This document shows positions 6,001 to 64,000 of a stretch of 64,000 bases of DNA, piece after piece. A model generated the notes under the pieces. That model was given only the letters and a program-made list of their open reading frames with translations, made no database searches and was not told where the DNA came from. Within the stretch, counting starts at the first letter, position 1, and each line of letters begins with the position of its first letter. The stretch covers positions 1 to 64,000 of the IMG/VR virus record IMGVR_UViG_3300047321_000238, one strand, 5' to 3'. The translations under genes and the position numbers were made by a program.

Positions 6001-9000
6001 TTACTTCATTGATACCAGCAAGTCTTGCCATTTCACAATCTATTCTAAGAGGAGAACATGTCATAATCTTTCTATAATTGATTAATCTATCTACGCAGTT
6101 TCTAGGTAAAGATTGAAGATTAGAAATAGTAGTCTTATCTTTAGTCTTTATATTTATTTCAATAGAAGTATCAGATGCTCCGATATATTGAGACACATAA
6201 CCATCCATAGAAGTTAAAGACATTTTATTAAAGTTATTGTTATATATAATCGAAACATTTTCTACTATGCAATTCTCTATTGGATATGGATCGAATAACA
6301 TAGACTTAGAAGTTTCTAAATCCATAGAATCTTTCATTGCAGCTAATGCTTGATTTTGTTGGAATAATTCATCTCCAGTTAATAGCGTATCTGTTAACAC
6401 GTTTCCTTTTTCATCAGTTATAAGGCCATAGTCATTAGCTATACTATCTAATAGATTTGTATCAGCATCAATATAAGTATAAGTGTCAAAAGATCCTGGA
6501 GCAACTATATTAAATGCCCCTGTTAGACTATATTGTACGGTTGTAGTTTTACTATCTGATTTTGTAGTTTTAGTATCTTTATATACTAAACCAACAGAAA
6601 ACCCAACAGTGAAAGCATCGTCTACTAATAATGTATCTGTAGATATAGCAAAACTTTTAGCATATTCTTGTTTTACTTTTCTTAATATATCTGGACTGCA
6701 TTTTGACCAATCGATGATTAGTTTTAAACCAAGCATTAAATTAATAGCCGTATCTGAATTTAATACTTTAGATTCTCTAATAACTATTCCATAATCTTTA
6801 ATTATAGAAGTATCAAAAGTTGTTTTATCTTCAAAGATCTTTTTTAAGTTATTTTCTAAAGGAGCTAAGTACTTATTAAAGAAAGCTGTAGGACTTATCC
6901 CATCAAAGTAAAATCCTTTTTCTCCCTTATATGATTTTGAATCATACTCTCCAGCTATATAATTATCAAAGTTATAATCAGCTATATCTCTTTCAAGATA
7001 AGGTGAATAATAATCTGTATCTGCATTATAAACTGCATTTATTTTCTTTATATCATCGTTAGCTACAGCTAATGTTTTTACAACTGCGGAATTCATTTTA
7101 GCAATCTTAGCTAAGAATGCTTTTTCATCAGCAGTATAAGTTACTACAGTTTCAAAAGGTTTCTTTTCTAAAGCTTCTTTTAATTGCTTTCTCATTTTTA
7201 AATGTTCTTCATTAGCAATATAGAAATCTATTAATGGACTCTTAAACTTCATTGGTTGAAGTACTGTCTTTTGTCCTAAAGTAGCTTCTAAATATGGCTC
7301 AGAGTTATAGTCAAGTAAAATAGCAGCTTCTCCATTTTGAATAGCTCTTTGATAGTAGTATCTCATAACTGGAAAATGAATTGTTTGTGCAAACAAATTC
7401 GTAGTTAAGTCTTCTTTTTTATCAATGTTTGGAGGTAGTATTTCTGGCATGAATTGTCTATATTCAAAGTCTTGTAATCTAATAGTAGCTTGAATAGTTC
7501 TTGGAAAATTAGGTACAGTACTTATTTGTATGCTACTTAAACTTACCGCTTCTATATTTAATACTTGGTTTATATAGTTATTTGTAATTGGTAAGTAAGG
7601 AGTGAATTTAAATTGAGCTATTAATGCTCTTAATCCATTCATATAATACTTCATAGTTTCTCCAGTAGGAAGTGTTTCTTCATAAGGAACTCCATTGATT
7701 CCTGCATCACCATTAAAGTATAATTGCATTTCTATTATTCTTTCTGACTTTGGAATAGTCTTAGTTATAGCACCCTTTGCTCTAATCAAAGATGTTCTTT
7801 GAGAATTAGTTTGAGAAACTAATCTAATTGAAGTTGGAGGCACCATTAACAAACAGTCACCTATAAGTGCTGTGTATTCTTTTAAGCAACTCATATCTGA
7901 ACCTGTAATTGCCCTTTGTATCTTTTCTCTATCGTCTCCTCCATGTTCGCTATGAAAGTCATTAAACTCATCTACATATATTTGAGCATTCTTATCATAA
8001 GACCACATTTTAAATGCACCAGAGTTATAATTGAAGTTAGATTCATTTGCAGGAGAACTACTATAAGAAGGTAGAATTACATACTCATTAAATTGACTAG
8101 CTAAAAACTTAGCCACATTAATCCATAATCCACTTCCATATTTAGGATCATCAGATTTAATATACATAGCACCAAGTCCACGCCTATTAAAGTCTTGTCC
8201 AAAGTAATCGTAACCTAATCTAGTATAAGCCTTACCTTGTGTATTTGTAGCTTGATTGTACAAATATTCAAGAGCGAAAGATGGATCGTCAGACATTCTA
8301 ATTGCATCACCTCTATACTCTTCAGGTACAGCATCTTTTTGTTGCTTAAAGGTTGTCCCATCTAATACAAAAAGCATAGCAGTAGCACCCTTAATCATAT
8401 CTTCAAGCATTGCTTTCGCGTCTAAAGATTGTTTGTGATAATCTTGATCTCTATCTTTTCCATCAGCTGGTTCATCTAAGAAACAAATAGCATATATAGG
8501 CAGAGGAATTTTATTTCCATTATCATATGTTTCATCTAGCTCTACATCTTTCTCTATTATTTCATAATAAACTTCTTTATCTCCAGAATTAATTACTAAA
8601 AAAGTAACATATTTATCGTCTTTTCTTACGTTTGCATATTCTAAATCGACAACACCTGTCTTTTTATCTATTATAGGAGTATAGTCAAAATAAACAAAAG
8701 AAAAATTAGCTCTATCTAATGTTTTATATTTATTAAGGATAGTACCTGCAGTATCACTGAATATTTTATCATCAGGATTATTATATGTCGTTATATTAGT
8801 ATTTGACATTAAATCACCAAATTTAGCATATATTATCTTAGGTTCTGCAGGTACATAAGTAACACGGCAATGAGGGATTTCGGGTGCATTTACACCCAAT
8901 ATTCTTATACCAAGTTTATCAACAGTAGTCGATAAACCCATAGTATTATATAAGAAATTTTTAACAGTAGGATATTCTAATCCGTCTCCTGCAAAGATAA

Positions 9001-38093: not shown

Positions 38094-39308
38094 TTATATT
38101 GTTTTTGTATTTACTGTGATAGTTGGTGGTACTGGATAAGATGGAGCAACTGCAATTCCCTTAGCAACTGTTATAGCTAGTCCATTATTCAAGATTCCGA
38201 TTCCATATCTTTCTTTACACTTAAGGTTTCTGATATCTTTTTCAGGATCAGTCCAGTTCTCAGTAGTTAATCCTTCTTTTTGAACGATAACTCCTACTTC
38301 AGATCTGTCTAAGCAATACATATCAAACTTCTTGTTTTGTTTGTCGAAACTAACAAATGGAGAGAAGTTCATAGTTAAAGGCATAGGTAATCTGTTTTGA
38401 ACTTGTTCTGGTTTCATTATAAGCTTTTGTCCATTACCATTAGCTTGAAGTCCAGCAAATCCTGGAGTTCCTTGTATTTGGTTGTTGAAGTGTACATCGT
38501 TACCGCCGAATGCTCCGTAGCTCATTCCGTTTCCGATCATACTGTTTCTAGCAAATACTACCCAAGTTAAAGGATGCATGATTACGTCTGTAGGAACAAA
38601 ACCGTTAGACATTACTGTTAAAGCCATATCTAAGAAATCTTCAACTGATAATGTATCGTTGTAATCTCCGTTTTCGTTTCTTCCTGTAGTTCCTGCTTCA
38701 GGTACTTGAGCTCTGATGTTGTTATTGAAAACTTGATGACAGTTAGATGAGAATGTATTGAATATCCATTCTTCTTTATATCTAGCCATAGCTTTACCCA
38801 TTTTTCTAACATTAAGACCTAAGATATCCCATGAGCTATCTGTAACAGCTTCTTCAGTTATAGCAACTCTAGTACCGATTTTCTTAACTCTGATTTCTAG
38901 AGTTGAGTTTTCGATAGTATTCATATCTACAACTTGTTCAGCGTATCTTCCGCCTTCTCCTACTTCGTGTGCATATAATTCACCAACAACTGGGATTACA
39001 TATACTGCTGAGTTTCCTCCTTCAACATTGATTGTTGAGAAAAAGTTTGTACCTAAATATTCAGGTTCTGCAGCTTCTCTTAATTTACCTTCGATTATTT
39101 TAGGAATTAATTTAATTGTATCAGTAGTAGTTAATGCTTCTTGTAAAGATGCTCTACCCTTTTGGAAATCTCCACCTAAATTTCTAACCATTTTTTCCAT
39201 AAGATCAATTGTCTTTGTTTCGATGCTAGGTTTCTTTCCTTCAGCAAGTTCAGCGTTAACAGTAGATCTCATAGTTTCTATTTTATTTAAAGTTTCTGTT
39301 AAATTCAT
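38094..39308 (-). CDS. Major capsid protein (HK97 fold)
   Basis: 404 aa; EVGEGG..Y, KKIGTRVAITEEAV, PTDVIMHPLTW and KERYGIGIL; follows protease and decoration genes; strongly biased codons. Confidence 0.85.
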   Translation of the reverse strand: MNLTETLNKIETMRSTVNAELAEGKKPSIETKTIDLMEKMVRNLGGDFQKGRASLQEALTTTDTIKLIPKIIEGKLREAAEPEYLGTNFFSTINVEGGNSAVYVIPVVGELYAHEVGEGGRYAEQVVDMNTIENSTLEIRVKKIGTRVAITEEAVTDSSWDILGLNVRKMGKAMARYKEEWIFNTFSSNCHQVFNNNIRAQVPEAGTTGRNENGDYNDTLSVEDFLDMALTVMSNGFVPTDVIMHPLTWVVFARNSMIGNGMSYGAFGGNDVHFNNQIQGTPGFAGLQANGNGQKLIMKPEQVQNRLPMPLTMNFSPFVSFDKQNKKFDMYCLDRSEVGVIVQKEGLTTENWTDPEKDIRNLKCKERYGIGILNNGLAITVAKGIAVAPSYPVPPTITVNTKTI

Positions 39309-45975: not shown

Positions 45976-47727
45976 CTACCACATTGATCTTCCGCCGCCA
46001 CCGCCAGCTCTCTTACCCCAAGAACTACTTCTTGTTGAAGCACTGCTTCGATAACCTTGAGATACTTTATACCATGAAGGTCTGTCTCCTCTTAAGTCAT
46101 CAGATGGTGGTTGTAATGGAACTCCGTTGCTAGAATAACTACCTTGTATTTGATTAAACATACTGTTCAATCCTGCTTGGCCTGGAATCTTACTTGAGAA
46201 ACTCATCTTTGTTGCAACTTCCATATCTTTTATAGTACCAGTCAATTCTTTGAATTCTAATACCATTGCTAAATATGCAAGTCCCATAGCATCAATATAA
46301 TGCTCTTCCTTAGATGAGAACACAGGCTTTCCGTCTGCAGAGATTCTTTCAACTTCATAGTTAACTAGTTGAGTATATAAAACTGTATCTAATGGTGACA
46401 TCATCATTCTATCTCTTTCAAAGCACAATGTTAATTGGTTTACCATAAATGGTTTCATTGGTTGTTTACTAACTTCTCCTGTTACAGGATCTACTATATC
46501 TATTACGTTAGAAAACTGCCATCTCTTAACTTTATTCTTTAATCCTGATTCAGGATGTTCATCTCCATATATATGAAGTCTTTCTATTTGATATTCTCCA
46601 GATCCTGCATCACAATAGATAAAGGCTGGTCTATAAATATCATTTAGTTCGATTATAGTGTTAACAGCATTGTCATAACTATAGTCGGCTCTTGCTAGTT
46701 CTACCCTTTTGATTACCTGGAATTTTTCCTTTATTACATTGTACTCTAAAATAATTATAGAAGATGATGCCCCATATTTATCCCAATCTATCCCCATTGT
46801 TCTAAATGGATTATACATTGGCTTGTTTAATTTATCATAAGAAAGCATTTTAGGAAATCTTTTTTCTCTTTCGCATAATAATTGTTGTTCATAATCTAAT
46901 TTATTATAAGCATAATATTCGAAAGTTAAAGATGCATCTAGTCTATCTTTAGGGAATACTCCTTTGTCTTGTGTACCAAAGTCAGCTTCTATTTCGTGTA
47001 CGTAAGCTTGAGCTGTTAATTGTGCTCTAAACTCAGAGGCCATTCTATCACACCAGTTTGGATTATGCATCGATGGATGATAGTGTTCTACAAATCCCAT
47101 GTTCTTATCTGTACATGCATTATAGAAATGCGATCTCTTACCTGTTGGGGTACTACTCATAGTAGTTCCTATATTAGGTCTTTCTGCAGCAATTGTAGTT
47201 ACAGCATCATAACAAACGTCAGACATATAATCTACTTCATCTAGATATAGCCAGTCAGCTTTTTGTCCACGGACAGAAGAAGCATCATTACCAGCAGTAA
47301 ATCCAATAATAGCTGATTCGTTCTTAAATTTAATTATAAATGGATTCTTTGTATTCGTAACCACTTCACTCGCTATCAATGGTGAAGATCTAAGTATTTC
47401 GTTTATACGCATGAATATTAATCTGATTTGATTTTCGTATGGAGTAACTACAACTATTCGATAGTTCTTTCTAGTGCACGCTCTCCAAAGCATGTCCACA
47501 ACCATTGTTTCCGTTTTACCTGTTCTTCGTCCGCATCTATAAACTTTCTTTAAACTTGGATCTCGAAGCATTTGAACTTGATACCAACGGGCGAGCCATG
47601 GTTCCTCTTTCTTTGTTATCGGATTAAATATTCTAAGAAATACTTGGGCCCACTTAACAGGATCGTTTAATACTTCTTGCATATTCTTTTTTTCTATCTC
47701 AGACATTTTCTGTCTTAATATTGCCAT
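45976..47727 (-). CDS. terL: Terminase large subunit
   Basis: Walker A CGRRTGKT, Walker B LYLDEVD, STPTG, nuclease MGIDWD and HYIDA. Confidence 0.92.
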   Translation of the reverse strand: MAILRQKMSEIEKKNMQEVLNDPVKWAQVFLRIFNPITKKEEPWLARWYQVQMLRDPSLKKVYRCGRRTGKTETMVVDMLWRACTRKNYRIVVVTPYENQIRLIFMRINEILRSSPLIASEVVTNTKNPFIIKFKNESAIIGFTAGNDASSVRGQKADWLYLDEVDYMSDVCYDAVTTIAAERPNIGTTMSSTPTGKRSHFYNACTDKNMGFVEHYHPSMHNPNWCDRMASEFRAQLTAQAYVHEIEADFGTQDKGVFPKDRLDASLTFEYYAYNKLDYEQQLLCEREKRFPKMLSYDKLNKPMYNPFRTMGIDWDKYGASSSIIILEYNVIKEKFQVIKRVELARADYSYDNAVNTIIELNDIYRPAFIYCDAGSGEYQIERLHIYGDEHPESGLKNKVKRWQFSNVIDIVDPVTGEVSKQPMKPFMVNQLTLCFERDRMMMSPLDTVLYTQLVNYEVERISADGKPVFSSKEEHYIDAMGLAYLAMVLEFKELTGTIKDMEVATKMSFSSKIPGQAGLNSMFNQIQGSYSSNGVPLQPPSDDLRGDRPSWYKVSQGYRSSASTRSSSWGKRAGGGGGRSMW

Positions 47728-53140: not shown

Positions 53141-53394
53141 ATCATTATCATTATCAAGTTGAACTGTTTCAGTAACCGAGTTGAATGGAATAACATGCAA
53201 CGTCATGCCACAACTCATGGAGGATCATGAAAAACTTATCTCTATCTGTCAAGATAACCTTAACTTTAAAAGACTTATTAATAACTAGTACAGTAAAGGC
53301 TTATATATGTGCATACATATATAGGTCTTATAGTGTACTAGATACACAAGCAATAGACTACATATAGTAGGTGAGCATAAGGAGGACAACTAGT

Positions 53395-53850
53395 ATGACA
53401 ACTTTATCAATGGAGGCTTTAATGAGCTTAAGCAAAGAAGAATTAGCAAGAATGGTTATGGACTTACACAAAGACACATTAACAGGATGTTATAAAAGAG
53501 AAGTATTAGATACAGTGAAACAAGACTTATACACTGTAGCGTTTGTTGATGTTAATGGATTAAAGGCTATTAATGATACACAAGGTCATGAGTATGGAGA
53601 TAAGCACATACTAAGTGTAGTAGATAGTATCAATGCTAATGTAAGGAAACAAGATACTGTAGTTAGGTATGGTGGAGATGAATTCATAATCATATTCAAT
53701 GACTGTAGTATAGACAATGCTAAAGGTGCTATATCTAGGATAACATCTGCATCAGTGGGTATAGCACAACATACAGACTTAGATATGGCAATTAAACTAG
53801 CTGATATGGACATGTATAAGAACAAAAGAAACTACTATGATGTAGTATAG
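53395..53850 (+). CDS. Minimal GGDEF diguanylate cyclase
   Basis: DTLTG, FVDVNGLKAINDTQGHEYGD, RKQD I-site, RYGGDEF, SVGIA and ADMDMYKNK; ATG 53395 behind AAGGAGG. Confidence 0.9.
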   Translation: MTTLSMEALMSLSKEELARMVMDLHKDTLTGCYKREVLDTVKQDLYTVAFVDVNGLKAINDTQGHEYGDKHILSVVDSINANVRKQDTVVRYGGDEFIIIFNDCSIDNAKGAISRITSASVGIAQHTDLDMAIKLADMDMYKNKRNYYDVV

Positions 53851-56045: not shown

Positions 56046-56663
56046 ATGGAAAACATCAATAAGAATTTAGACTTCATGGACTTAACAGGAAACGTAAAGG
56101 ATATGAGAATTATCAATAATACACAAGTTGGTATATTCTCTGTTGTGCAAAAGCATTTAACAGAATCATATTTTCACACATCAAGAGGATATATCAAAGT
56201 TGATCCTGTTGTATCTATAATATGTGTTGAACATGCTAAAGGTAAAATGGAACTATTAGCTGGAATCAAGATGTTAGAAACAGTCCAAATGATTAACTAT
56301 TTGATTGAAAAGAATTTCACAATTGCTGAACTTCCTACAGAAGTTGCAAAGATCAGAAACTACAGAGCTATTATAAGAACTGTAGAAAATAAGTTGAAGT
56401 TCGAAGCTAAACAATTATTAGTAGCTAAAGAAGCAGAGAATAAAGAAATAGAGAATAAAGAAATAGAAACTACTGTAGTTGTTGAACCAATCAAAAAACA
56501 ACTTCCTAAGATGAAGACTCTTTCTGATATACCTTCATATAGAGAAGTTGCTTTAACAGTTGAAGAAAAGAAGATAATGCAAAGCATTGTTCACACTAAA
56601 GATATAGCATCATCTTTCTTCAACAAAAGTAAAATAATCAATATCTTTAGCAAAACTAAATGA
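56046..56663 (+). CDS. Hypothetical early protein
   Basis: GAAAGGTGG RBS; 205-aa ORF. Confidence 0.65.
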   Translation: MENINKNLDFMDLTGNVKDMRIINNTQVGIFSVVQKHLTESYFHTSRGYIKVDPVVSIICVEHAKGKMELLAGIKMLETVQMINYLIEKNFTIAELPTEVAKIRNYRAIIRTVENKLKFEAKQLLVAKEAENKEIENKEIETTVVVEPIKKQLPKMKTLSDIPSYREVALTVEEKKIMQSIVHTKDIASSFFNKSKIINIFSKTK

Positions 56664-56724
56664 TAGATTATATACGTACTAAAGACAAATAAACTCCACC
56701 AGACCTTAGCAAGCAAATTCGCTT

Positions 56725-57156
56725 GAAAGGAGGTGATGCCTGGCAAGATATACGAACTTGGGTAGGCTGCTTGAACATGTTGTGCTTTTGATGCAGCAAC
56801 AGTTGGTTGGGTGGGACAGAAACACAACAATGGGGGATGAAATAAACAGATTTCACTAACGAAAGGAAGAAACAAACAGAATGATATTTTCAAAACTAAA
56901 GACGCTAAAGGAAGACTCGGCAAATTACCAACAACTATTCAGCCTGGAGGTTGATGAATTAAATTTTCTTCAATCTCTAGAAAGGAGGTTGATAATCTAA
57001 ATTTTTATCAGCCACCGAAAAGGAGGTTGGTAAGGATTATGACGTAACTTTACACATATCATTTAAGGAGGTTGATACTCACACATGGACTAATATTAAA
57101 GGAGATGATGCTTGGCAAGAAATAGAAATGACTATAAATATGAAAGGAGGTGATGC
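56725..57156 (+). repeat. Array of 7 (A)AAGGAGGT(T)GAT motifs; candidate ncRNA or leader
   Basis: GGAG(G/A) cores at 56729, 56946, 56984, 57022, 57067, 57101 and 57146 with no long ORF. Confidence 0.75.
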
Positions 57157-57298
57157 TAAATCTAAGACTAATAAGACTACTGAAGGATTGTTCGTAATCT
57201 TTCAATGCATGGGCCTATAGTATTTGAACTTAGGCACTATGAGTGACAGGGATAATGGGGTACAAATAAAAATATATGATGAAAAGGATGGATACAAA

Positions 57299-60200
57299 AT
57301 GATAAACACAAACACATTAACTAATGGAACTACTACAACAAACACAAATGAAGGGATGGATGTACAAATGGTAAATATCAATGTAACAAACGTAGCTAAA
57401 ATAGTAGGGGTATCAAATGAAGAAGTTGTAGCATTAGCTATAAGATTAGGTTTAGAAGTTTCAACATCAGGTAAGAAAATAAACAATGTTATTTCTACTG
57501 CAATTGTAGTTGAAGCTGTTAATGATTTAATAGCTAAAGATGAAGTTGCAGTTACAAATATAGTAAACAATAATGAAGGGATGGATGTAAAAATGGTTAA
57601 CAAGATTAAAGAGGAAATAATGGAAATGGTTTATTCTGAAATGAACAAGGAAATAGCTAAACAAGAAATTAGAGACGAATACTTAAACAGAGTTGCAACT
57701 GTTGCAGCTATAGTTGATGAATCTAATAAAAAGTACAAAAGAAATACTTTAAGCAAAGTAGAATTAGTTGATTATGTAGTAGCTAACAATATCGAAGTTA
57801 ATGACAAAGAATTAAGAGCACTATATTCTCAATTAAATGCTGCAAGAGATAAAGAAGCTAAATCAGAATTAGTTCACAAGATCATAGATCAAATGAATGA
57901 AGGTAAATTCACTTATAAAATGTATGCAACTGCTAATAAGTACAAGCACCTTTTATCTGAAGATGATACAATTACTTTTGAATTAGCATTAGATGTAGCT
58001 CTTAATAAGGCTTCTATGAAGAACTACAAGAACCTATTAGCTGTTAAAAGATGGACTAAAGATATCACTGTTGCATTATTAAGAAGAGTTGTTTGCTATA
58101 CTGGTAATCAATATGAAACAGAAGTAGCTCCTCAAATGTTCAGTTCTCTAATCAGAGCTTGTGATGTTACAGTTAAAGATGTTGCAGATTCTAAGATGAC
58201 TTTAAATGGATACACTACTGATGAGTTACTATTATTCTCATTCGATAAAGATGTATTAAAATTAACTGGAAATAATGACAGAGAAGTATTAGCTAAAAAA
58301 GATTACCTAGCTAAAGTATTCTATATCATTGCTGGATTATCTGAACAAAAGGTTTATATAGTTGAAAGAAAATCAGGTATTGCAGATGTTTATACTAATA
58401 TCAACAAGATCAAATTAAATGAAGGTGAAGTTATAAAACAATATGAATTCTTAGGAATAACTCCATCTGGTTTAAGATCTGGAACTATGACATTAGCTAT
58501 CACTAAAGAAATTCACGCTGATGGAACTGTTGTTGAAAGAGATAGAAGAGTTGAAATCATGGACAAAGCTTCTGATAATTCATTCAGCATTAACTTTATC
58601 GTAGGTGCGAATGAAAATGGACAAGCTATATTCAAAGATTGCGAATCAGTACTTGATGCATTTAAAGAAATGTCTAGAATGATGTTATGTGCTACATCTT
58701 CAAAAGTGCTTGGTAAATTAGACTCTTATGTTGTATTAGATAATTTATCTTTTGGTGCAGGATATAATGCTAAAGATACTAACTCTCCTGCTAAAATGGG
58801 TGAAGAAAATTTCGTAGATTGTCAAGATACTACTGATGGTTTAGGATTAATATCTAATGATATGTTAAAAGAAAATCTTCAAGCTATGAACATTCCATGC
58901 TCAATTAAAGACTTATTAGGAATGACATTCCAAGCTAGAGGTGGCGGATTAAAGATTGCTGCAATGTCAAGATCTAAAGAAGCTATTAGACTAGAAGCAA
59001 AAGCATCATTAAGCAGAGGAGCATCTGTATTAAGAGCTGTATTCAAAGGACAAGAAGTTAAAGCTAAAGATCTAACTGATGAAATGTTAGATAACATGCA
59101 AGGATTGTTTGATGGTAATGGTATGAAGTTAATCGATCACAATGCTGAAATCGAATTAGTAATGCTTAAGAAAGCTTATTCATCTGACTCTAAATTATCT
59201 GATGTTGTTAATATTATAATGATGGTTAATGATGAACAAGCTACTACAGCATTATTATCTTCTAAAATAAAAAGTCAAATCTTAGACAAATTAAAAGACA
59301 TTGGTATAAACGTAGATTACAATGCAGAAACTGATGAAGTTATCAGCGTAAAATGTGATCTTAAGAACTTAAAAAGAATCAACAATGACAGTCAAACAGT
59401 TGAATGGATGTTTAGATCTCTTCCTGAAACTATGATTGCATTAGCTCCTGGTGTTCAAAAGACAAACTTTAATAGCTTATTGAAAGGTTTAGCTAACCTA
59501 ATCAACGAGCTTAATGTTGAAGTTAATTGTGAATATACTGTTGTTCAATCAGATCCAGCAGTTAGATTTGGTGTAAGAATAATAAAAGAAGATGAAGTAT
59601 TCTGCCCAAGCTTAATAGAAGTAAATAAAGTATCAGGTGTTAGACATCCAGTATCAAACTTATTTGCTGTTTCTACATTCAAGACACTTACTCTAAAAAC
59701 TATCTTAAAGAGAATTGATAAATTGAATGTATCTCTTGAAGTTAAAAACATGTTATTTGAATTCTACAAAGGAGTAGAAGGTTATGCTATAATACCAGCA
59801 TCTCACTACTACATGGAAAAACATGATGGAATGGATTTCGATATCGATGCTATGCAATTTTTCTTAGATCAAGAAGTAGTAGCAATACTTGAAAAGACTT
59901 CTGATATAGGAACAATAATTGATAGATCTATTGATGAAGAAATGGATTGTTCTATTAAGGAATCTAATGATGACCATGCTATCAAAGCTTTCTACAAAGA
60001 TATTAACAAGAAAGATTTCCACCCTATAGCTTATGATGTAAAAGTATCTGAAGAAAAGATAGCACCAGTTAAAGCATTAAAAGGAATGGTTATGCCTAAG
60101 AAGATTAATGTTGCTTCTACTGAAGATAATCATTACAAGAAAAATGCAAATGGAAGATACTCATTAGACTTCTCTTCAGTTGCTATGATGGTATTAGATT

Positions 60201-62242
60201 ATTTCTTAAACCCAATAGATTCAGTTGGTATCATGGCAACAAACTTCTATAATAATGCTAAAATACTTATGGCATTAAAATCAATTAACACTGAAATCAC
60301 TAAAGAAATGAAACAATTCATAGTTCAAGGAATGAGAACAATGTTTTCTTGTAGTGGTTTAAAGAAGTATTCTTCTCCAATCAGAAAGAACAATGACGGA
60401 ACAAAATTTAACTACAACGATAGAAATAAAGTTGTTCTATGCAAAGATGTTTGTCACAAAATAATCAAAACATTTATCAACTCTAAAGGAGATTTTGCAG
60501 ATTGTATTCAATTCTTAATTGATGTATGTATTTGTAGTAGATATCCAGCTGAAACTTCTATTGATAGTGCTAAGAAAATGTATAAAGTTATAAACATGTT
60601 TGCATTATCTGGTTGTATTAAAGCTATGGGTTGTAAAAATGCTGTTAAATTCTTAAACTTTGATCCATATATGTTAGATGACCAAGGTAACTCTATTGAA
60701 GAAGTAGAAACTACAAAAGCATTCACTAACATTATTGACATCTTTAATGCAGCTCAACCAAAAAATGCTCTACAATATTCAACAAACAATTTCTTTGGAT
60801 TAAAATTAATAAAAGAAGAAATGTCATGTGTTGGTTGGGAAGATGCTGATAAGGCTATGTTAGCTTTCAATACAGAGAAAAAAGTAGCAGGTATTAAAGA
60901 TCCTACTTATCTATTAAAAGAAAGACTAATGAACTTTGCTAATTCAGTTATAGTATTTGCAGCTAAAGAATTAGAAGCATTTGTTAAATCAGATGAAGCT
61001 AATGCTATCAGAAAAGAATTCAAAGGTTTCTACAATTCAGAAGATAATTATTTCAGAGTTGATAAAGTAGTATCTAACATCGTTGGTACTTATATCACAT
61101 TAACTGAATCAATCAAAGCTTCAGAAAATGATGAAATAGATGATATAACTGCAAAGAAATATCTTAAGACAAATGCATTACAAGCTCTAATGAACACAGC
61201 TAAACTTTCATTTAAAACAGCTAGAAAACCAGTATCTGATGAAGAAATTGGAGCAGGTGTGTTCTATTATATGATTACTTCTTTTGAAAAAGAAAAAGAC
61301 AATGTATGTACTTCAGTTAACTCTAAGATTCTTGATATCTTCCAAAAAGAGATATTAGCATTCTTAAAATCTAAAGGATATGATATGCTTGCTGCTGAAG
61401 AAATATTATATGCTGTTAATCCTGTAACTAACAGACAAGTTAAATTAAATACAACAGAAGGATTAACATGTTCTGCATATAATGGTCATGGTACAATTGA
61501 ATTAGAAGATGGTTCAATCTATTTATTAACTCTAAAGAATAAGAAAGCATCTTTTGATAATGGTACTATTTCTATAGTAGATGATAAGTATGTTGTTGTT
61601 CAACAAAGAAAAACTTTAGAAGAAAATATACAATCAGGATTCTACTTTGGTGCTAAAATGGAAAAAGGAATATTCAACAAAGCTAATCTTCTAATGCAAG
61701 ATATTAAAAAGACTACTGGTGATTACAATGAATACAAAGCAGCATTAGCAGAAATAAATCCTAATAACATTTTAGCTGAGACACAATATGATGAAATTCT
61801 TTTCAGAACAAGAAGAGAAATGGACGAAAGAGGAAAATCATATACAGCTAATCTTTTAATTGGTATGAAAGATGATCAAGAATGTTTAATAGCTGAGTTA
61901 TACCTTAATACAATCGTTGCTCAATTATTACAAACTGCTGAGTTATCTGAAAGCAATGTAAGATTATTCATGACTGAAAATAGTTGTACTGTTAACATTA
62001 TTGAAGACTCTCTATTAGCTGAAGTTGAATCAGTTAGCACTCCTGACACTATAAGTGATTCATTTGGATTAGATGACTTAGAAGGATTCAGTAACTCAAT
62101 AATAGATTATTCTTGTTATGATGTTACTCCAGTTCAAGAAAACTATGATGAAAAACAATTCGTTGCAATTACAACAAACTACGATATTCCTCAAGTTGAC
62201 ATGTGCAATGACGAAAACTATTTAAATGGTTTAACTCAATAA
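57299..62242 (+). CDS. YonO/cRdRP-like single-subunit DNA-dependent RNA polymerase (about 1647 aa)
   Basis: TDGLGLIS, FQARGGGLK, VRHP and DGMDFDID in the order found in the cRdRP/YonO family; likely ATG 57299 behind GAAAAGGA (ORF track starts 57224). Confidence 0.8.
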   Translation: MINTNTLTNGTTTTNTNEGMDVQMVNINVTNVAKIVGVSNEEVVALAIRLGLEVSTSGKKINNVISTAIVVEAVNDLIAKDEVAVTNIVNNNEGMDVKMVNKIKEEIMEMVYSEMNKEIAKQEIRDEYLNRVATVAAIVDESNKKYKRNTLSKVELVDYVVANNIEVNDKELRALYSQLNAARDKEAKSELVHKIIDQMNEGKFTYKMYATANKYKHLLSEDDTITFELALDVALNKASMKNYKNLLAVKRWTKDITVALLRRVVCYTGNQYETEVAPQMFSSLIRACDVTVKDVADSKMTLNGYTTDELLLFSFDKDVLKLTGNNDREVLAKKDYLAKVFYIIAGLSEQKVYIVERKSGIADVYTNINKIKLNEGEVIKQYEFLGITPSGLRSGTMTLAITKEIHADGTVVERDRRVEIMDKASDNSFSINFIVGANENGQAIFKDCESVLDAFKEMSRMMLCATSSKVLGKLDSYVVLDNLSFGAGYNAKDTNSPAKMGEENFVDCQDTTDGLGLISNDMLKENLQAMNIPCSIKDLLGMTFQARGGGLKIAAMSRSKEAIRLEAKASLSRGASVLRAVFKGQEVKAKDLTDEMLDNMQGLFDGNGMKLIDHNAEIELVMLKKAYSSDSKLSDVVNIIMMVNDEQATTALLSSKIKSQILDKLKDIGINVDYNAETDEVISVKCDLKNLKRINNDSQTVEWMFRSLPETMIALAPGVQKTNFNSLLKGLANLINELNVEVNCEYTVVQSDPAVRFGVRIIKEDEVFCPSLIEVNKVSGVRHPVSNLFAVSTFKTLTLKTILKRIDKLNVSLEVKNMLFEFYKGVEGYAIIPASHYYMEKHDGMDFDIDAMQFFLDQEVVAILEKTSDIGTIIDRSIDEEMDCSIKESNDDHAIKAFYKDINKKDFHPIAYDVKVSEEKIAPVKALKGMVMPKKINVASTEDNHYKKNANGRYSLDFSSVAMMVLDYFLNPIDSVGIMATNFYNNAKILMALKSINTEITKEMKQFIVQGMRTMFSCSGLKKYSSPIRKNNDGTKFNYNDRNKVVLCKDVCHKIIKTFINSKGDFADCIQFLIDVCICSRYPAETSIDSAKKMYKVINMFALSGCIKAMGCKNAVKFLNFDPYMLDDQGNSIEEVETTKAFTNIIDIFNAAQPKNALQYSTNNFFGLKLIKEEMSCVGWEDADKAMLAFNTEKKVAGIKDPTYLLKERLMNFANSVIVFAAKELEAFVKSDEANAIRKEFKGFYNSEDNYFRVDKVVSNIVGTYITLTESIKASENDEIDDITAKKYLKTNALQALMNTAKLSFKTARKPVSDEEIGAGVFYYMITSFEKEKDNVCTSVNSKILDIFQKEILAFLKSKGYDMLAAEEILYAVNPVTNRQVKLNTTEGLTCSAYNGHGTIELEDGSIYLLTLKNKKASFDNGTISIVDDKYVVVQQRKTLEENIQSGFYFGAKMEKGIFNKANLLMQDIKKTTGDYNEYKAALAEINPNNILAETQYDEILFRTRREMDERGKSYTANLLIGMKDDQECLIAELYLNTIVAQLLQTAELSESNVRLFMTENSCTVNIIEDSLLAEVESVSTPDTISDSFGLDDLEGFSNSIIDYSCYDVTPVQENYDEKQFVAITTNYDIPQVDMCNDENYLNGLTQ

Positions 62243-63398: not shown

Positions 63399-63404
63399 TA
63401 TTGC

Positions 63405-63905
63405 CCCCTTCGGGGATAGATCAGTGCCATTCCTTCGGATAAATATAAATAAGCTCCCTCCGCTCGCAGTCCCTTCGGGAACAAATAAACTAACTTCGTT
63501 AGTAGAAATAAGCTTCGCAGACTAATCGTGCGGATTCTATGAGAGCTATATTGAAACTAAGTTCTTATTGAACTATTTAGTTCTCATAATAAATTCGCTA
63601 CACTCATAGTCTTAGTCATGCGTGTTATCTGAGATTATCCTTAATCCCAAATCTCATCTTATCCCAATAAACTCACTACGTTCGTAGTTTTAATCATGCG
63701 GATATCTTGAGACATTTATATGCTTACTCATAGTTATAAACTTACTTACGAGTGACATTATAAATTCAATTAGCTATTAATTAGCTACTACATACATACA
63801 ACAAGGGGGAAATAATAGGAGACTTGCGTTTAATCCATTTCTCAGGTTAAATCTATATGCTCTGTATGTATAAAATAAGCTACGCAGTTTAATCATGCGT
63901 ATTAT
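63405..63905. repeat. Non-coding cluster of C-TTC-G hairpins and TAATCATGCG-type repeats
   Basis: Hairpins at 63405, 63431, 63470, 63489, 63512, 63675 and 63879; repeat cores at 63523, 63613, 63691 and 63890. Confidence 0.65.
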
Positions 63906-64000
63906 TCGTGTAACTCTAATGCTGAAAATAGAGTGTAGACTTAGCAGGTTCTTCTATTGCTTGCTATATGTTGAACGTATAAATGGAATCCTTATATATT

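What the first reader, a model, noticed from the sequence alone, without database searches (positions are those of the whole stretch)
56725..57156. Non-coding array of seven extended Shine-Dalgarno/GGA-loop hairpins upstream of the RNAP gene: ribosome or CsrA sponge?
Seen: GAAAGGAGGTGATGCCTGGCAAGA (56725), GGAGGTTGAT (56946), GAAAGGAGGTTGAT (56980), GAAAAGGAGGTTGGT (57017), TAAGGAGGTTGAT (57064), AAAGGAGATGATGCTTGGCAAGA (57098) and GAAAGGAGGTGATGC (57142). The last six cores are 34-45 nt apart. Copies 1 and 7 are 13-nt perfect complements of the Firmicutes 16S 3' tail, yet none heads a properly spaced substantial gene. Several fold with G-U pairs so that GGA lies in the loop (tcagcc-TGGA-ggttga; atcagcc-accgaaaaGGA-ggttggt; tcaatc-tctagaaaGGA-ggttga). 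Established: repeated loop GGA is the CsrB/RsmZ architecture, Firmicutes CsrA is normally antagonised by the protein FliW, and the spacing is about one ribosome footprint. Inference: a phage RNA that titrates CsrA or 30S subunits, or a ribosome-loading leader for the RNAP mRNA.
Basis: partly seen in the sequence, partly recalled or inferred. Interest (0 to 1): 0.82.

Follow-up and report, generated by a model that had tools for sequence, protein, structure and literature searches.

The report
Frameshift gene full of ribosome-binding motifs
The cluster of ribosome-binding-like motifs is real, but most of it lies inside a small jumbo-phage gene that seems to be read with two back-to-back -1 ribosomal frameshifts, not in a free-standing decoy RNA.

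Summary
Observation confirmed. All seven motifs are at the stated coordinates. Copies 1 and 7 are the two strongest complements of the canonical 16S 3' tail in the whole 248-kb phage genome, and 7 of 157 strong sites fall within 500 nt.

The 'non-coding sponge' reading is not supported. A small ORF with its own RBS (56881-57000) carries an in-phase slippery heptamer A_AAT_TTT. Thirteen nt downstream lies a 14-nt purine element that pairs with the 16S tail apart from one bulged base. The zero frame stops 10-14 codons later, while the -1 frame, which has no start codon, stays open.

This 34-nt cassette aligns without gaps in 12 related uncultivated jumbo-phage contigs. In this phage the 38-nt (3n-1) cassette is duplicated. 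Two successive -1 shifts would therefore give a 113-aa product ending at 57220, and each GGAGGT sits 9 nt 5' of the next heptamer, as in dnaX. Copies 2-7 are thus inside coding sequence.

Copy 1 precedes a conserved, covarying H-type pseudoknot (56766-56829) that matches no Rfam family.

The motifs are conserved as nucleotides whatever the reading frame, so cis-acting 16S pairing is likely (frameshift stimulation, pausing or STAB-SD-like protection). That step is inferred. There are no RNA or protein data.

The parts
56725..56739 (+). Copy 1: extended SD complement GAAAGGAGGTGATGC, 26 nt 5' of the pseudoknot; not inside the recoded gene
   Evidence: -23.0 kcal/mol, joint strongest site in the genome. 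The same 14-mer occurs 1-3 times in the leaders of 10 relatives, in different positions and reading frames.
56766..56829 (+). H-type pseudoknot: S1 56766-70 with 56793-97, S2 56778-84 with 56823-29; G-rich loop 3 (GGGTGGGA); conserved GGG at 56760-62
   Evidence: The same topology is the best pseudoknot at the homologous place in 14 loci, with different, compensating stem sequences. Single copy in the genome. No Rfam match.
56862..56869 (+). RBS (AAAGGAAG) of the small ORF
   Evidence: Each relative has an AAGGAG-type RBS 7-13 nt before its small ORF's start.
56881..57000 (+). ORF0, 39 codons, zero frame; product if no shift occurs
   Evidence: Homologous short ORFs are called in relatives (L047 2655-2825; L056 1709-1840).
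56946..56955 (+). Copy 2: GGAGGTTGAT inside ORF0, 9 nt 5' of heptamer 1 (position of a dnaX-type upstream stimulator)
   Evidence: The 9-14 nt range for -1 stimulation is given in PMC5009743.
56961..56967 (+). Slippery heptamer 1, A_AAT_TTT, in phase with ORF0
   Evidence: The motif class A_AA.U_UU.Y is among the efficient ones in E. coli (PMC4066793).
56980..56994 (+). Copy 3: cassette element 1 (GAAAGGAGGTTGATA). It starts 13 nt after heptamer 1, pairs with the 16S tail with one bulged U, and its GGAGGT is 9 nt 5' of heptamer 2
   Evidence: -19.7 kcal/mol.
56999..57005 (+). Slippery heptamer 2, in phase with the frame reached after shift 1; overlaps the ORF0 stop (56998-57000)
57018..57032 (+). 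Copy 4: cassette element 2 (GAAAAGGAGGTTGGT); 3' arm of a predicted 14-bp hairpin
   Evidence: (-17.5 kcal/mol, z -5.9).
57005..57220 (+). Third-frame ORF reached after shift 2: 71 codons, no start codon before 57128. Contains copies 5 (57064-76), 6 (57098-111) and 7 (57142-56), read as KEVD, KGDDA and KGGDA
   Evidence: 61 codons open beyond the cassette, P = 0.0018 by shuffling.
57229..57262 (+). Conserved motif between the end of the recoded gene and the big gene (TTAGGCACTATGAGTGAC..GGGGTAC); relatives carry ATGAGTGCCATG at the same place
   Evidence: Function unknown.
57299..62242 (+). Big downstream gene (1647 aa) with invariant KHDGMDxDID motif; probably a YonO/RdRP-type single-subunit RNA polymerase
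   Evidence: protein-atlas look-alikes carry PF05183, score 0.96. No Pfam, PHROG, NCBIfam or PDB sequence hit.

Best explanation
Positions 56881-57220 are a small, fast-evolving phage gene decoded by programmed -1 ribosomal frameshifting. The 'Shine-Dalgarno array' consists of cis elements embedded in it.

How it would be read:
- Ribosomes start at the ORF0 RBS and ATG (56881).
- At A_AAT_TTT (56961) a fraction slips to -1. The rest stop at 57000.
- Shifted ribosomes meet a second, in-phase heptamer 38 nt later (56999). A second slip carries them through 71 more codons to 57220, 78 nt before the polymerase-like gene.

Each cassette is: heptamer, a 13-nt variable spacer, a 14-nt purine element that pairs with the 16S rRNA 3' tail apart from one bulged base, and a zero-frame stop about 10 nt later. 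Because the cassette is 38 nt (3n-1) and is duplicated here, each element also sits 9 nt 5' of the next heptamer. That is the position from which an internal SD stimulates -1 shifting in dnaX.

Shown: the motifs, their enrichment, the cassette's conservation and phase, the open start-less -1 frame, and the complementarity to 16S.

Inferred: that shifting really occurs; that 16S pairing (not the hairpin or a protein) is why the element is conserved; and that the perfect 13-nt copies (1, 6, 7) act as ribosome-tethering sites. Those could work through pausing or through STAB-SD-like protection of the leader of the polymerase mRNA.
For: - Cassette conservation. It aligns without gaps in 13 instances from 12 phages whose big protein is only 26-63% identical. 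T4-T7, A22, G24, G25, G28, G31, T33 and A34 are invariant, while the spacer varies.
- Phase. The heptamer is in phase with a short RBS-bearing ORF in 12 of 13 instances. The 13th keeps the T_TTT tetramer.
- Frames. After the heptamer the zero frame closes in 10-14 codons and +1 in 3-8, while -1 runs 24-76 codons. Beyond the conserved cassette -1 stays open for 14-66 codons, with P = 0.002-0.25 per locus by shuffling.
- Shift site. In 4 instances a -1-frame stop lies 3 nt before the heptamer, so the shift must occur at or after it.
- No independent start. The -1 ORFs have no ATG/GTG/TTG near their 5' ends and no near-cognate start after the SD-like element.
- Coding signature. Internal indels between relatives are 3, 3, 3 and 21 nt.
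- Repeat arithmetic. The period is 38 nt = 3n-1. The copies are only 71% identical, yet both keep the heptamer.
- Heptamer class. H_HH.U_UU.Y is among the most efficient in E. coli and U_UU.Y is among the best tetramers (PMC4066793). AAAUUUU is a shift site in two umbraviruses (PMC13098196).
- Upstream SD. GGAGGT lies 9 nt 5' of both heptamers, inside the 9-14 nt range for -1 stimulation (PMC5009743).
- 16S pairing. All 13 cassette elements pair with the tail over 12-14 bp at -14.6 to -19.8 kcal/mol. The single bulge sits at different places in different clades.
- Co-occurrence. Relative L051 has an ordinary RBS+ATG small hydrophobic ORF, no heptamer and no strong anti-SD complement.
Against: - There are no RNA-seq, Ribo-seq or proteomic data; no RNA run was listed.
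- The -1 products are poorly conserved in sequence and length. 7 of 10 scored products have a hydrophobic segment, but the window's and L043's do not. The product itself may therefore matter less than the act of translation.
- The downstream hairpin starts 0-3 nt after the heptamer, which is too close for a classical 3' stimulator. It uses two registers, is weak or absent in 4 of 13 instances and has no covariation support.
- An anti-SD complement downstream of a shift site has no established role.
- Two serial shifts would give a low yield of the full product.
- The substitution pattern between relatives is not clearly biased to third positions; the counts are small.
- The upstream SD at 9 nt is found only in this phage.
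Confidence: 0.62

Rival explanations
1. Untranslated-leader reading. Only ORF0 is translated. The rest is a long 5' leader of the polymerase mRNA, and its SD complements bind 30S subunits or ribosomes without initiating. That would protect the mRNA from 5'-to-3' decay (STAB-SD / SP82 polypurine type) or keep ribosomes on standby.
For: - Copies 1 and 7 are the strongest 16S complements in the genome and have no usable start codon.
- The 14-mer is conserved as nucleotides in different frames and positions among relatives; for example it reads KGGDA in L049 and KEVMP in L059.
- The nearest cultured phages by terminase infect Moorella and Bacillus, i.e. Firmicutes, which have RNase J. STAB-SD and the polypurine stabiliser are cited in PMC3997798.
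Against: - It does not explain the in-phase invariant heptamer or its fixed 13-nt distance to the element.
- It does not explain the start-less -1 frames kept open in every lineage, the 3n indels or the 3n-1 repeat period.
- The transcript's 5' end is unknown.
- This reading may well hold for copies 1, 6 and 7 alongside frameshifting.
Confidence: 0.17
2. One reading: a discrete non-coding phage RNA that titrates CsrA or free 30S subunits in trans.
For: There are seven purine motifs in about 430 nt, some with GGA in predicted hairpin loops, and very strong 16S complementarity.
Against: - The region holds an RBS-bearing ORF and a conserved recoding cassette.
- GGA is replaced by GGG in 4 of 13 homologous elements.
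- The hairpins are not supported by covariation.
- Relatives carry only 1-4 strong sites per leader, too few for a sponge.
- No terminator-like or sigma-70-like signals bound a discrete RNA.
- The phage encodes no CsrA.
Confidence: 0.05
3. Decay reading: in this particular phage the small gene was broken by a 38-nt duplication and is a drifting remnant. The motif array is a by-product of that duplication.
For: - Only this phage has two cassettes.
- Its predicted product lacks the hydrophobic segment seen in most relatives.
- The region evolves fast.
Against: - The two copies are only 71% identical, so the duplication is old. Yet both heptamers, both purine elements and both phases are intact.
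- The third frame then stays open for 71 codons (P = 0.0018).
- A 38-nt unit containing a -1 site is self-consistent.
Confidence: 0.1
4. DNA-level reading: the repeats are protein-binding sites on DNA (iterons, operators or promoter elements for the phage polymerase).
For: Direct repeats with 34-45 bp spacing lie next to a polymerase-like gene.
Against: - The motifs occur on one strand only and match the 16S tail.
- They are unique to this locus, so they are not a general promoter.
- The spacings are not helical multiples.
- The reading-frame arithmetic (3n-1, 3n-1, 3n, then two in-frame codon spacings) is unexplained by DNA binding.
Confidence: 0.04

Closest known systems
E. coli dnaX -1 frameshift cassette (A_AAA_AAG, SD-like element upstream, stem-loop downstream)
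   Same: An in-phase X_XXY_YYZ heptamer. In this phage an internal GGAGGT lies 9 nt upstream, inside the 9-14 nt window. A predicted hairpin lies downstream. Two products share an N terminus.
   Different: The heptamer differs (A_AAU_UUU). The hairpin starts 0-3 nt after the site and lacks covariation. The conserved element in relatives is a 16S complement placed downstream, not upstream. The cassette is tandemly duplicated. The gene is tiny and poorly conserved.
IS3/IS911 OrfA-OrfB and phage tail-chaperone G/GT -1 frameshifts
   Same: Short zero-frame ORF, overlapping -1 ORF without its own start, a slippery heptamer conserved in phase across relatives, and a mobile-element or phage context.
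   Different: No relation to transposase or tail-chaperone genes. The locus sits in the early/replication arm upstream of a polymerase-like gene. Two serial sites. The -1 part is not a conserved domain.
Bacillus subtilis cdd -1 frameshift (SD of the next gene acts as stimulator)
   Same: Firmicute context; an SD-type sequence inside a coding region is linked with a -1 shift near the end of a short reading frame.
   Different: In cdd the SD is upstream of the shift site CGA_AAG (from my own knowledge; the paper appears only as a reference in PMC5009743). Here the conserved element is downstream of the heptamer, except in the duplicated window copy.
STAB-SD of cryIIIA and the SP82 phage polypurine 5' stabiliser
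   Same: Copies 1, 6 and 7 are perfect GAAAGGAGG-type 16S complements in a leader, not used for initiation, in a phage whose nearest cultured kin infect Firmicutes.
   Different: Position relative to the transcript 5' end is unknown. Copies 6 and 7 lie within a translated frame. Stabilisation is untested.
CsrB/RsmZ-type sponge RNAs
   Same: Repeated purine motifs, some with GGA in predicted loops.
   Different: The region is coding. GGA is not conserved in homologues. There are few sites per relative and no discrete transcript signals.
Pseudoknot translational operators (T4 gene 32, rpsO/S15 leaders)
   Same: An H-type pseudoknot in a leader about 50 nt 5' of an RBS, conserved by covariation.
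   Different: No sequence or Rfam relation. The ligand or protein partner is unknown. The G-rich loop 3 is itself SD-like.

Membership tests
Programmed -1 ribosomal frameshift cassette | X_XXY_YYZ (or Z_ZZN) slippery motif in phase with the zero frame | tested here: met
   A_AAT_TTT is in phase at 56961 and 56999 and in 10 of the 11 relatives' cassettes; T_TTT in L057.
Programmed -1 ribosomal frameshift cassette | Overlapping ORFs: the zero frame ends soon after the site; the -1 frame is open, lacks its own start, and this is conserved in relatives | tested here: met
   Zero frame closes in 10-14 codons; -1 runs 24-76 codons; no start codons; shuffle P = 0.002-0.25 per locus. Indels are multiples of 3.
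Programmed -1 ribosomal frameshift cassette | Stimulatory RNA structure 5-9 nt downstream, supported by covariation | tested here: inconclusive
   Hairpins fold in 9 of 13 instances (z -2 to -7). They begin 0-3 nt after the heptamer and use two registers, and pair counts are no better than shuffles or a -3 slide.
Programmed -1 ribosomal frameshift cassette | Upstream SD-like stimulator 9-14 nt 5' of the site (bacterial type) | tested here: met
   Met in the window at both sites (9 nt; range from PMC5009743). Not present in the single-cassette relatives.
Programmed -1 ribosomal frameshift cassette | Trans-frame protein actually made | not testable with these tools
   No RNA runs were listed; no proteomics.
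STAB-SD / polypurine 5' mRNA stabiliser | SD complement that does not direct initiation | tested here: met
   In copies 1 and 7 ATG is 2 nt after GGAGG, and no ORF longer than 22 codons follows.
STAB-SD / polypurine 5' mRNA stabiliser | Lies near the 5' end of the stabilised transcript, and stabilisation depends on 30S binding and a 5' exonuclease | not testable with these tools
   The transcription start is unknown. The promoter scan is uninformative. No RNA data.
CsrB/RsmZ-type CsrA sponge | Non-coding transcript | tested here: not met
   An RBS-bearing ORF0 plus a conserved recoded frame cover copies 2-7.
CsrB/RsmZ-type CsrA sponge | Many GGA motifs in hairpin loops, conserved in homologues | tested here: not met
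   GGA becomes GGG in L041, L043, L056 and L059. Relatives have 1-4 sites. The hairpins lack covariation.
CsrB/RsmZ-type CsrA sponge | Binds CsrA | not testable with these tools
   Needs EMSA. The phage has no CsrA gene and the host is unknown.
Any Rfam family (riboswitch, sRNA, intron) | Covariance-model match | tested here: not met
   No hit at gathering score in the window, and nothing meaningful at E <= 10 in 56400-57500.

The most novel reading that the evidence does not exclude
The conserved element 13 nt downstream of the heptamer may work by pairing with the 3' tail of 16S rRNA of another 30S subunit or ribosome. That partner could be one newly docked on the site once the translating ribosome has melted the hairpin, or a leading ribosome tethered there. 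In effect it would be a natural 'antisense-oligo' or collision-type roadblock that drives -1 shifting. Frameshift efficiency, and with it translation through the leader up to the polymerase-like gene, would then report the cell's free-ribosome load. Together with the tandem double shift and the new upstream pseudoknot, this would be a ribosome-sensing control module for a phage RNA polymerase.
Probability: 0.12. Interest if true: 0.85.

Novelty: new variant of a known kind. Interest (0 to 1): 0.55.

Why it matters
If confirmed, four things follow.
- It would be a rare case of two serial -1 frameshifts 38 nt apart, created by duplicating a 3n-1 unit.
- It would be the first frameshift cassette whose conserved partner element is a near-complete complement of the 16S 3' tail placed downstream of the slip site.
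- It flags a family of uncultivated jumbo phages, probably infecting Firmicutes. In them, gene callers leave a 400-600-nt 'empty' gap before a YonO/RdRP-like polymerase gene. That gap in fact holds a recoded gene, a new pseudoknot RNA and a further conserved motif.
- It is a caution for genome scans: dense SD-like clusters can be coding and recoding signals rather than non-coding RNAs.

Tried and rejected
- Rfam at gathering and at E <= 10, and tRNA/tmRNA scans: nothing.
- blastn of the locus and tblastn of the big protein against GenBank phages: no match.
- IMG/VR pattern search for paired GGAGGTTGRT: 39 unrelated coding repeats.
- IMG/VR search for the cassette pattern. One scan was wasted on a spacing that was off by one. 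The correct one found only the known relative plus ordinary genes that read the pattern in a single frame.
- Single-protein locus search in IMG/VR: nothing. The profile search gave 3 loci in IMG/VR and 3 in metagenomes.
- RNA-seq: none was listed.
- Stop-codon read-through from the recoded gene into the big gene: in frame and stop-free only in the window; 5 of the other 11 loci are in frame but all 5 have further stops in the gap. Rejected.
- Internal initiation of the -1 ORF from the SD-like element: no canonical or near-cognate start at columns 34-42. Rejected.
- Shift site just before the zero-frame stop (cdd-like): no conserved slippery sequence there. Rejected.
- ATACGTRC and GGGGTAC as general phage promoters: too few copies in the genome.
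- Collision model with a leading ribosome at the stop codon: A-site spacing is about 12 codons, against the 8-10 optimum reported in PMC6815119. Kept only as a speculative variant.
- MAFFT alignments of the pseudoknot were structurally wrong, and one coordinate was mistyped. I used my own helix search instead, so no covariance model was built.
- Pfam, PHROG, NCBIfam and PDB sequence searches did not identify the big protein. Only the protein-atlas lead did.

Full report
**Context.** The window is the first 64 kb of a 247,883-bp IMG/VR virus record with direct terminal repeats. GC content is 30.5%. A crude ORF map shows strong Shine-Dalgarno use: a G-rich peak at -13 to -9, with typical spacing of about 8 nt. 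By terminase, the nearest cultured phages are Moorella phage MTATph1 and the Bacillus jumbo phages of the 0305phi8-36 group, so a Firmicute host is likely but not shown. The finding lies in a 635-nt stretch (56664-57298) between a 205-aa ORF and a 1647-aa ORF.

The big protein has no Pfam, PHROG, NCBIfam or PDB sequence match. It does have an invariant KHDGMDxDID motif across 28 homologues. Its protein-atlas look-alikes are phage proteins carrying PF05183 (RdRP), some also with Rho_N.

- AAGGAGGT occurs 20 times in the genome (both strands), 5 of them here. GGAGGTTG occurs 4 times, all here.
- Against the canonical 16S 3' tail (typed from general knowledge), copies 1 and 7 are the two strongest sites in the genome at -23.0 kcal/mol, and copy 3 is fourth.
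- Seven of 157 sites at or below -12 kcal/mol fall in 500 nt, where about 0.16 would be expected.
- None is followed by a properly spaced start that opens a substantial ORF.
- Rfam and tRNA scans are empty.

**Relatives.** The big protein has 28 homologues at 26-63% identity in public assemblies. I fetched 17 loci. In most of them gene callers leave a gap of about 200-590 nt, or a gap with one tiny gene, in front of the big gene. Three blocks recur in those gaps: a pseudoknot, a short RBS-bearing ORF ending in a conserved cassette, and a motif (ATGAGTGCCATG) shortly before the big gene. One clade (L045, L048, L052) has an ordinary gene there instead, with an HExxH motif.

**The cassette.** Thirteen instances, two in the window and eleven in relatives, align without a single gap over 34 nt.
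- Columns 1-7 are AAATTTT. L057 has TCTTTT.
- Columns 8-20 vary.
- Columns 21-34 are AARGGNNGKTGATA, with A22, G24, G25, G28, G31, T33 and A34 invariant.

The heptamer is always in phase (A_AAT_TTT) with a short ORF that has an AAGGAG-type RBS. After it the zero frame stops in 10-14 codons and the +1 frame in 3-8, but the -1 frame runs 24-76 codons. In four instances a -1-frame stop lies 3 nt before the heptamer, so the frame change must occur at or after it and before the zero-frame stop 30-42 nt later. The heptamer is the only slippery sequence conserved in that interval.

The -1 ORFs have no ATG/GTG/TTG near their 5' ends, and there is no near-cognate start at a usable distance from the SD-like element. 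Beyond the conserved cassette the -1 frame stays open for 14-66 codons. Each of these is unlikely in shuffles of the same sequence (P = 0.0018 to 0.25, below 0.04 in eight of ten loci). Internal indels between relatives are 3, 3, 3 and 21 nt.

Relative L051 has an ordinary small hydrophobic ORF with RBS and ATG, no heptamer and no strong 16S complement. This suggests that the SD-like elements go together with recoding.

The heptamer class A_AA.U_UU.Y is among the efficient ones in E. coli, and U_UU.Y is among the best tetramers (PMC4066793). AAAUUUU is the shift site of two umbraviruses (PMC13098196).

**This phage has two cassettes.** The direct repeat 56946-56983 / 56984-57021 has a 38-nt period and 71% identity. 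Thirty-eight is 3n-1, so a unit containing one -1 site can be duplicated without losing the frame, provided both sites are used.

That is what the sequence shows. After a slip at 56961, the new frame reads 13 codons and arrives in phase at the second heptamer (56999). After a second slip, 71 codons are open to 57220. Possible products are therefore:
- 39 aa with no shift;
- 55 aa with one shift;
- 113 aa with two shifts.

In the final frame, copies 5, 6 and 7 read KEVD, KGDDA and KGGDA. The 34 arises because the GGAGG core sits one position differently in the KEV and KGG codons.

In the window only, GGAGGT lies 9 nt 5' of each heptamer. That is within the 9-14 nt range in which an internal SD stimulates -1 shifting (PMC5009743).

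**What the purine elements are.** They are conserved as nucleotides, not as peptide.
- In the cassette, the invariant columns are third positions of the zero frame, while the variable columns are first and second positions of both frames.
- The perfect 14-mer AAAGGAGGTGATGC recurs 1-3 times in ten relatives' leaders. It appears before the pseudoknot, after it, or inside the -1 ORF. It is read as KGGDA in most and as KEVMP in L059.
- The cassette element is the same 13-nt 16S complement with one extra base, and the position of that base differs by clade: GGAGGU-U-GAU, GGAGG-A-UGAU, GGA-C-GGUGAU, GGA-U-GGUGAU. All 13 pair over 12-14 bp at -14.6 to -19.8 kcal/mol.
- A-to-G changes (GGGGG in four loci) keep G-U pairing with 16S but destroy the GGA that CsrA needs.

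I therefore think pairing with the 16S tail is the selected property. How a complement placed downstream of a shift site would act is not established.

The cis hairpin that includes it folds well in 9 of 13 instances. However, it begins 0-3 nt after the heptamer, uses two registers, and is no better than shuffled or slid controls in pair counts. A stalled leading ribosome can stimulate a trailing one at 8-10 codons of A-site spacing (PMC6815119). Here the geometry gives about 11-12 codons, so that model is only a possibility.

For copies 1, 6 and 7, the closest known behaviour is the STAB-SD / SP82 polypurine type of non-initiating SD that protects Firmicute mRNAs. Both are cited as references in PMC3997798. 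This is untested here.

**The pseudoknot.** Between copy 1 and ORF0 lies an H-type pseudoknot:
- S1, 56766-70 with 56793-97;
- S2, 56778-84 with 56823-29;
- a G-rich loop 3.

In 14 loci the best-scoring pseudoknot at the homologous place has the same topology with different stem sequences. Examples for S2 are TGTTGTG/CACAACA, GTTATAGTTT/AAACTATAAC, ATAGCAG/CTGCTAT and TCACAATAG/CTATTGTGA. Close relatives also differ by compensatory changes: GTTTATAG/CTATAAAC in L049 against GTCTATAG/CTATAGAC in L058. The element is single-copy in this genome and matches no Rfam family. Its role is unknown; an operator, a 5' protective structure or a standby site are all possible.

'Non-coding' and 'CsrA sponge' are not supported. 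The '30S-binding / ribosome-loading leader' option survives only in a cis-acting form. The phage has no CsrA gene. No RNA data could be found, so transcription, shifting and binding all remain to be shown.

**Limits.**
- The host, and therefore its 16S tail, is inferred.
- All evidence for frameshifting is comparative.
- The -1 products are weakly conserved, and the window's lacks the hydrophobic segment seen in 7 of the 10 scored products. The act of translating through the leader may matter more than the protein.
- Transcriptional slippage on the short T run cannot be excluded without RNA reads, though runs of 4-5 are far shorter than known slippage sites (my own knowledge).

Noticed in passing
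window 56766-56829 (flanks 56760-56843): Conserved H-type pseudoknot with a G-rich loop 3, supported by compensatory changes in 14 related loci. It is single-copy in the genome and has no Rfam match.
   Followed up: partly
window 63399-64000 (continues to about 64180 in the genome): A gene-free stretch of about 780 nt after the 366-aa gene that follows the big gene. It is dense in short hairpins with UUCG-type tetraloops and carries at least 4 copies of TAATC(A/G)TGCG(G/T)AT. Relatives have a 400-1070-nt gap at the same place. No Rfam hit at E <= 1. Candidate large structured RNA.
   Followed up: partly
window 57229-57262; e.g. L046 2895-2930, L047 2905-2940: A conserved motif (ATGAGTGCCATG, often inside a covarying stem such as GGCTAA/TTAGCC or GACTAA/TTAGTC) lies between the end of the recoded gene and the big gene. 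In one clade it is followed by a conserved TATATAAATAAAAT. It could be a promoter or a processing site.
   Followed up: no
window 57281-57301, 57350-57372, 57575-57597: The string RGGATGGATRYAMAAATG (SD-like plus ATG) occurs three times in frame at the start of the big ORF: once as its RBS and twice as the peptide NEGMDV(Q/K)M. L042 has the same repeat. These may be alternative starts or an N-terminal duplication.
   Followed up: no
window 53371-53850: A 159-aa ORF with a GGDEF (diguanylate cyclase) domain at the head of the rightward gene arm (Pfam E = 1.3e-20).
   Followed up: no
window 38-25050 (minus strand): Three giant ORFs of 3081, 2867 and 2066 aa lie next to the structural module, which includes capsid 38094-39308 and terminase 45976-47727. 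They were not characterised.
   Followed up: no
L045 2512-2982, L048 2519-2941, L052 about 6267-6715: In the clade that lacks the leader module, the gene directly upstream of the big gene encodes a small protein with an HExxH-like motif (VHELMH, LLHELTH, VHEIMH), suggesting a metallopeptidase-like protein.
   Followed up: no
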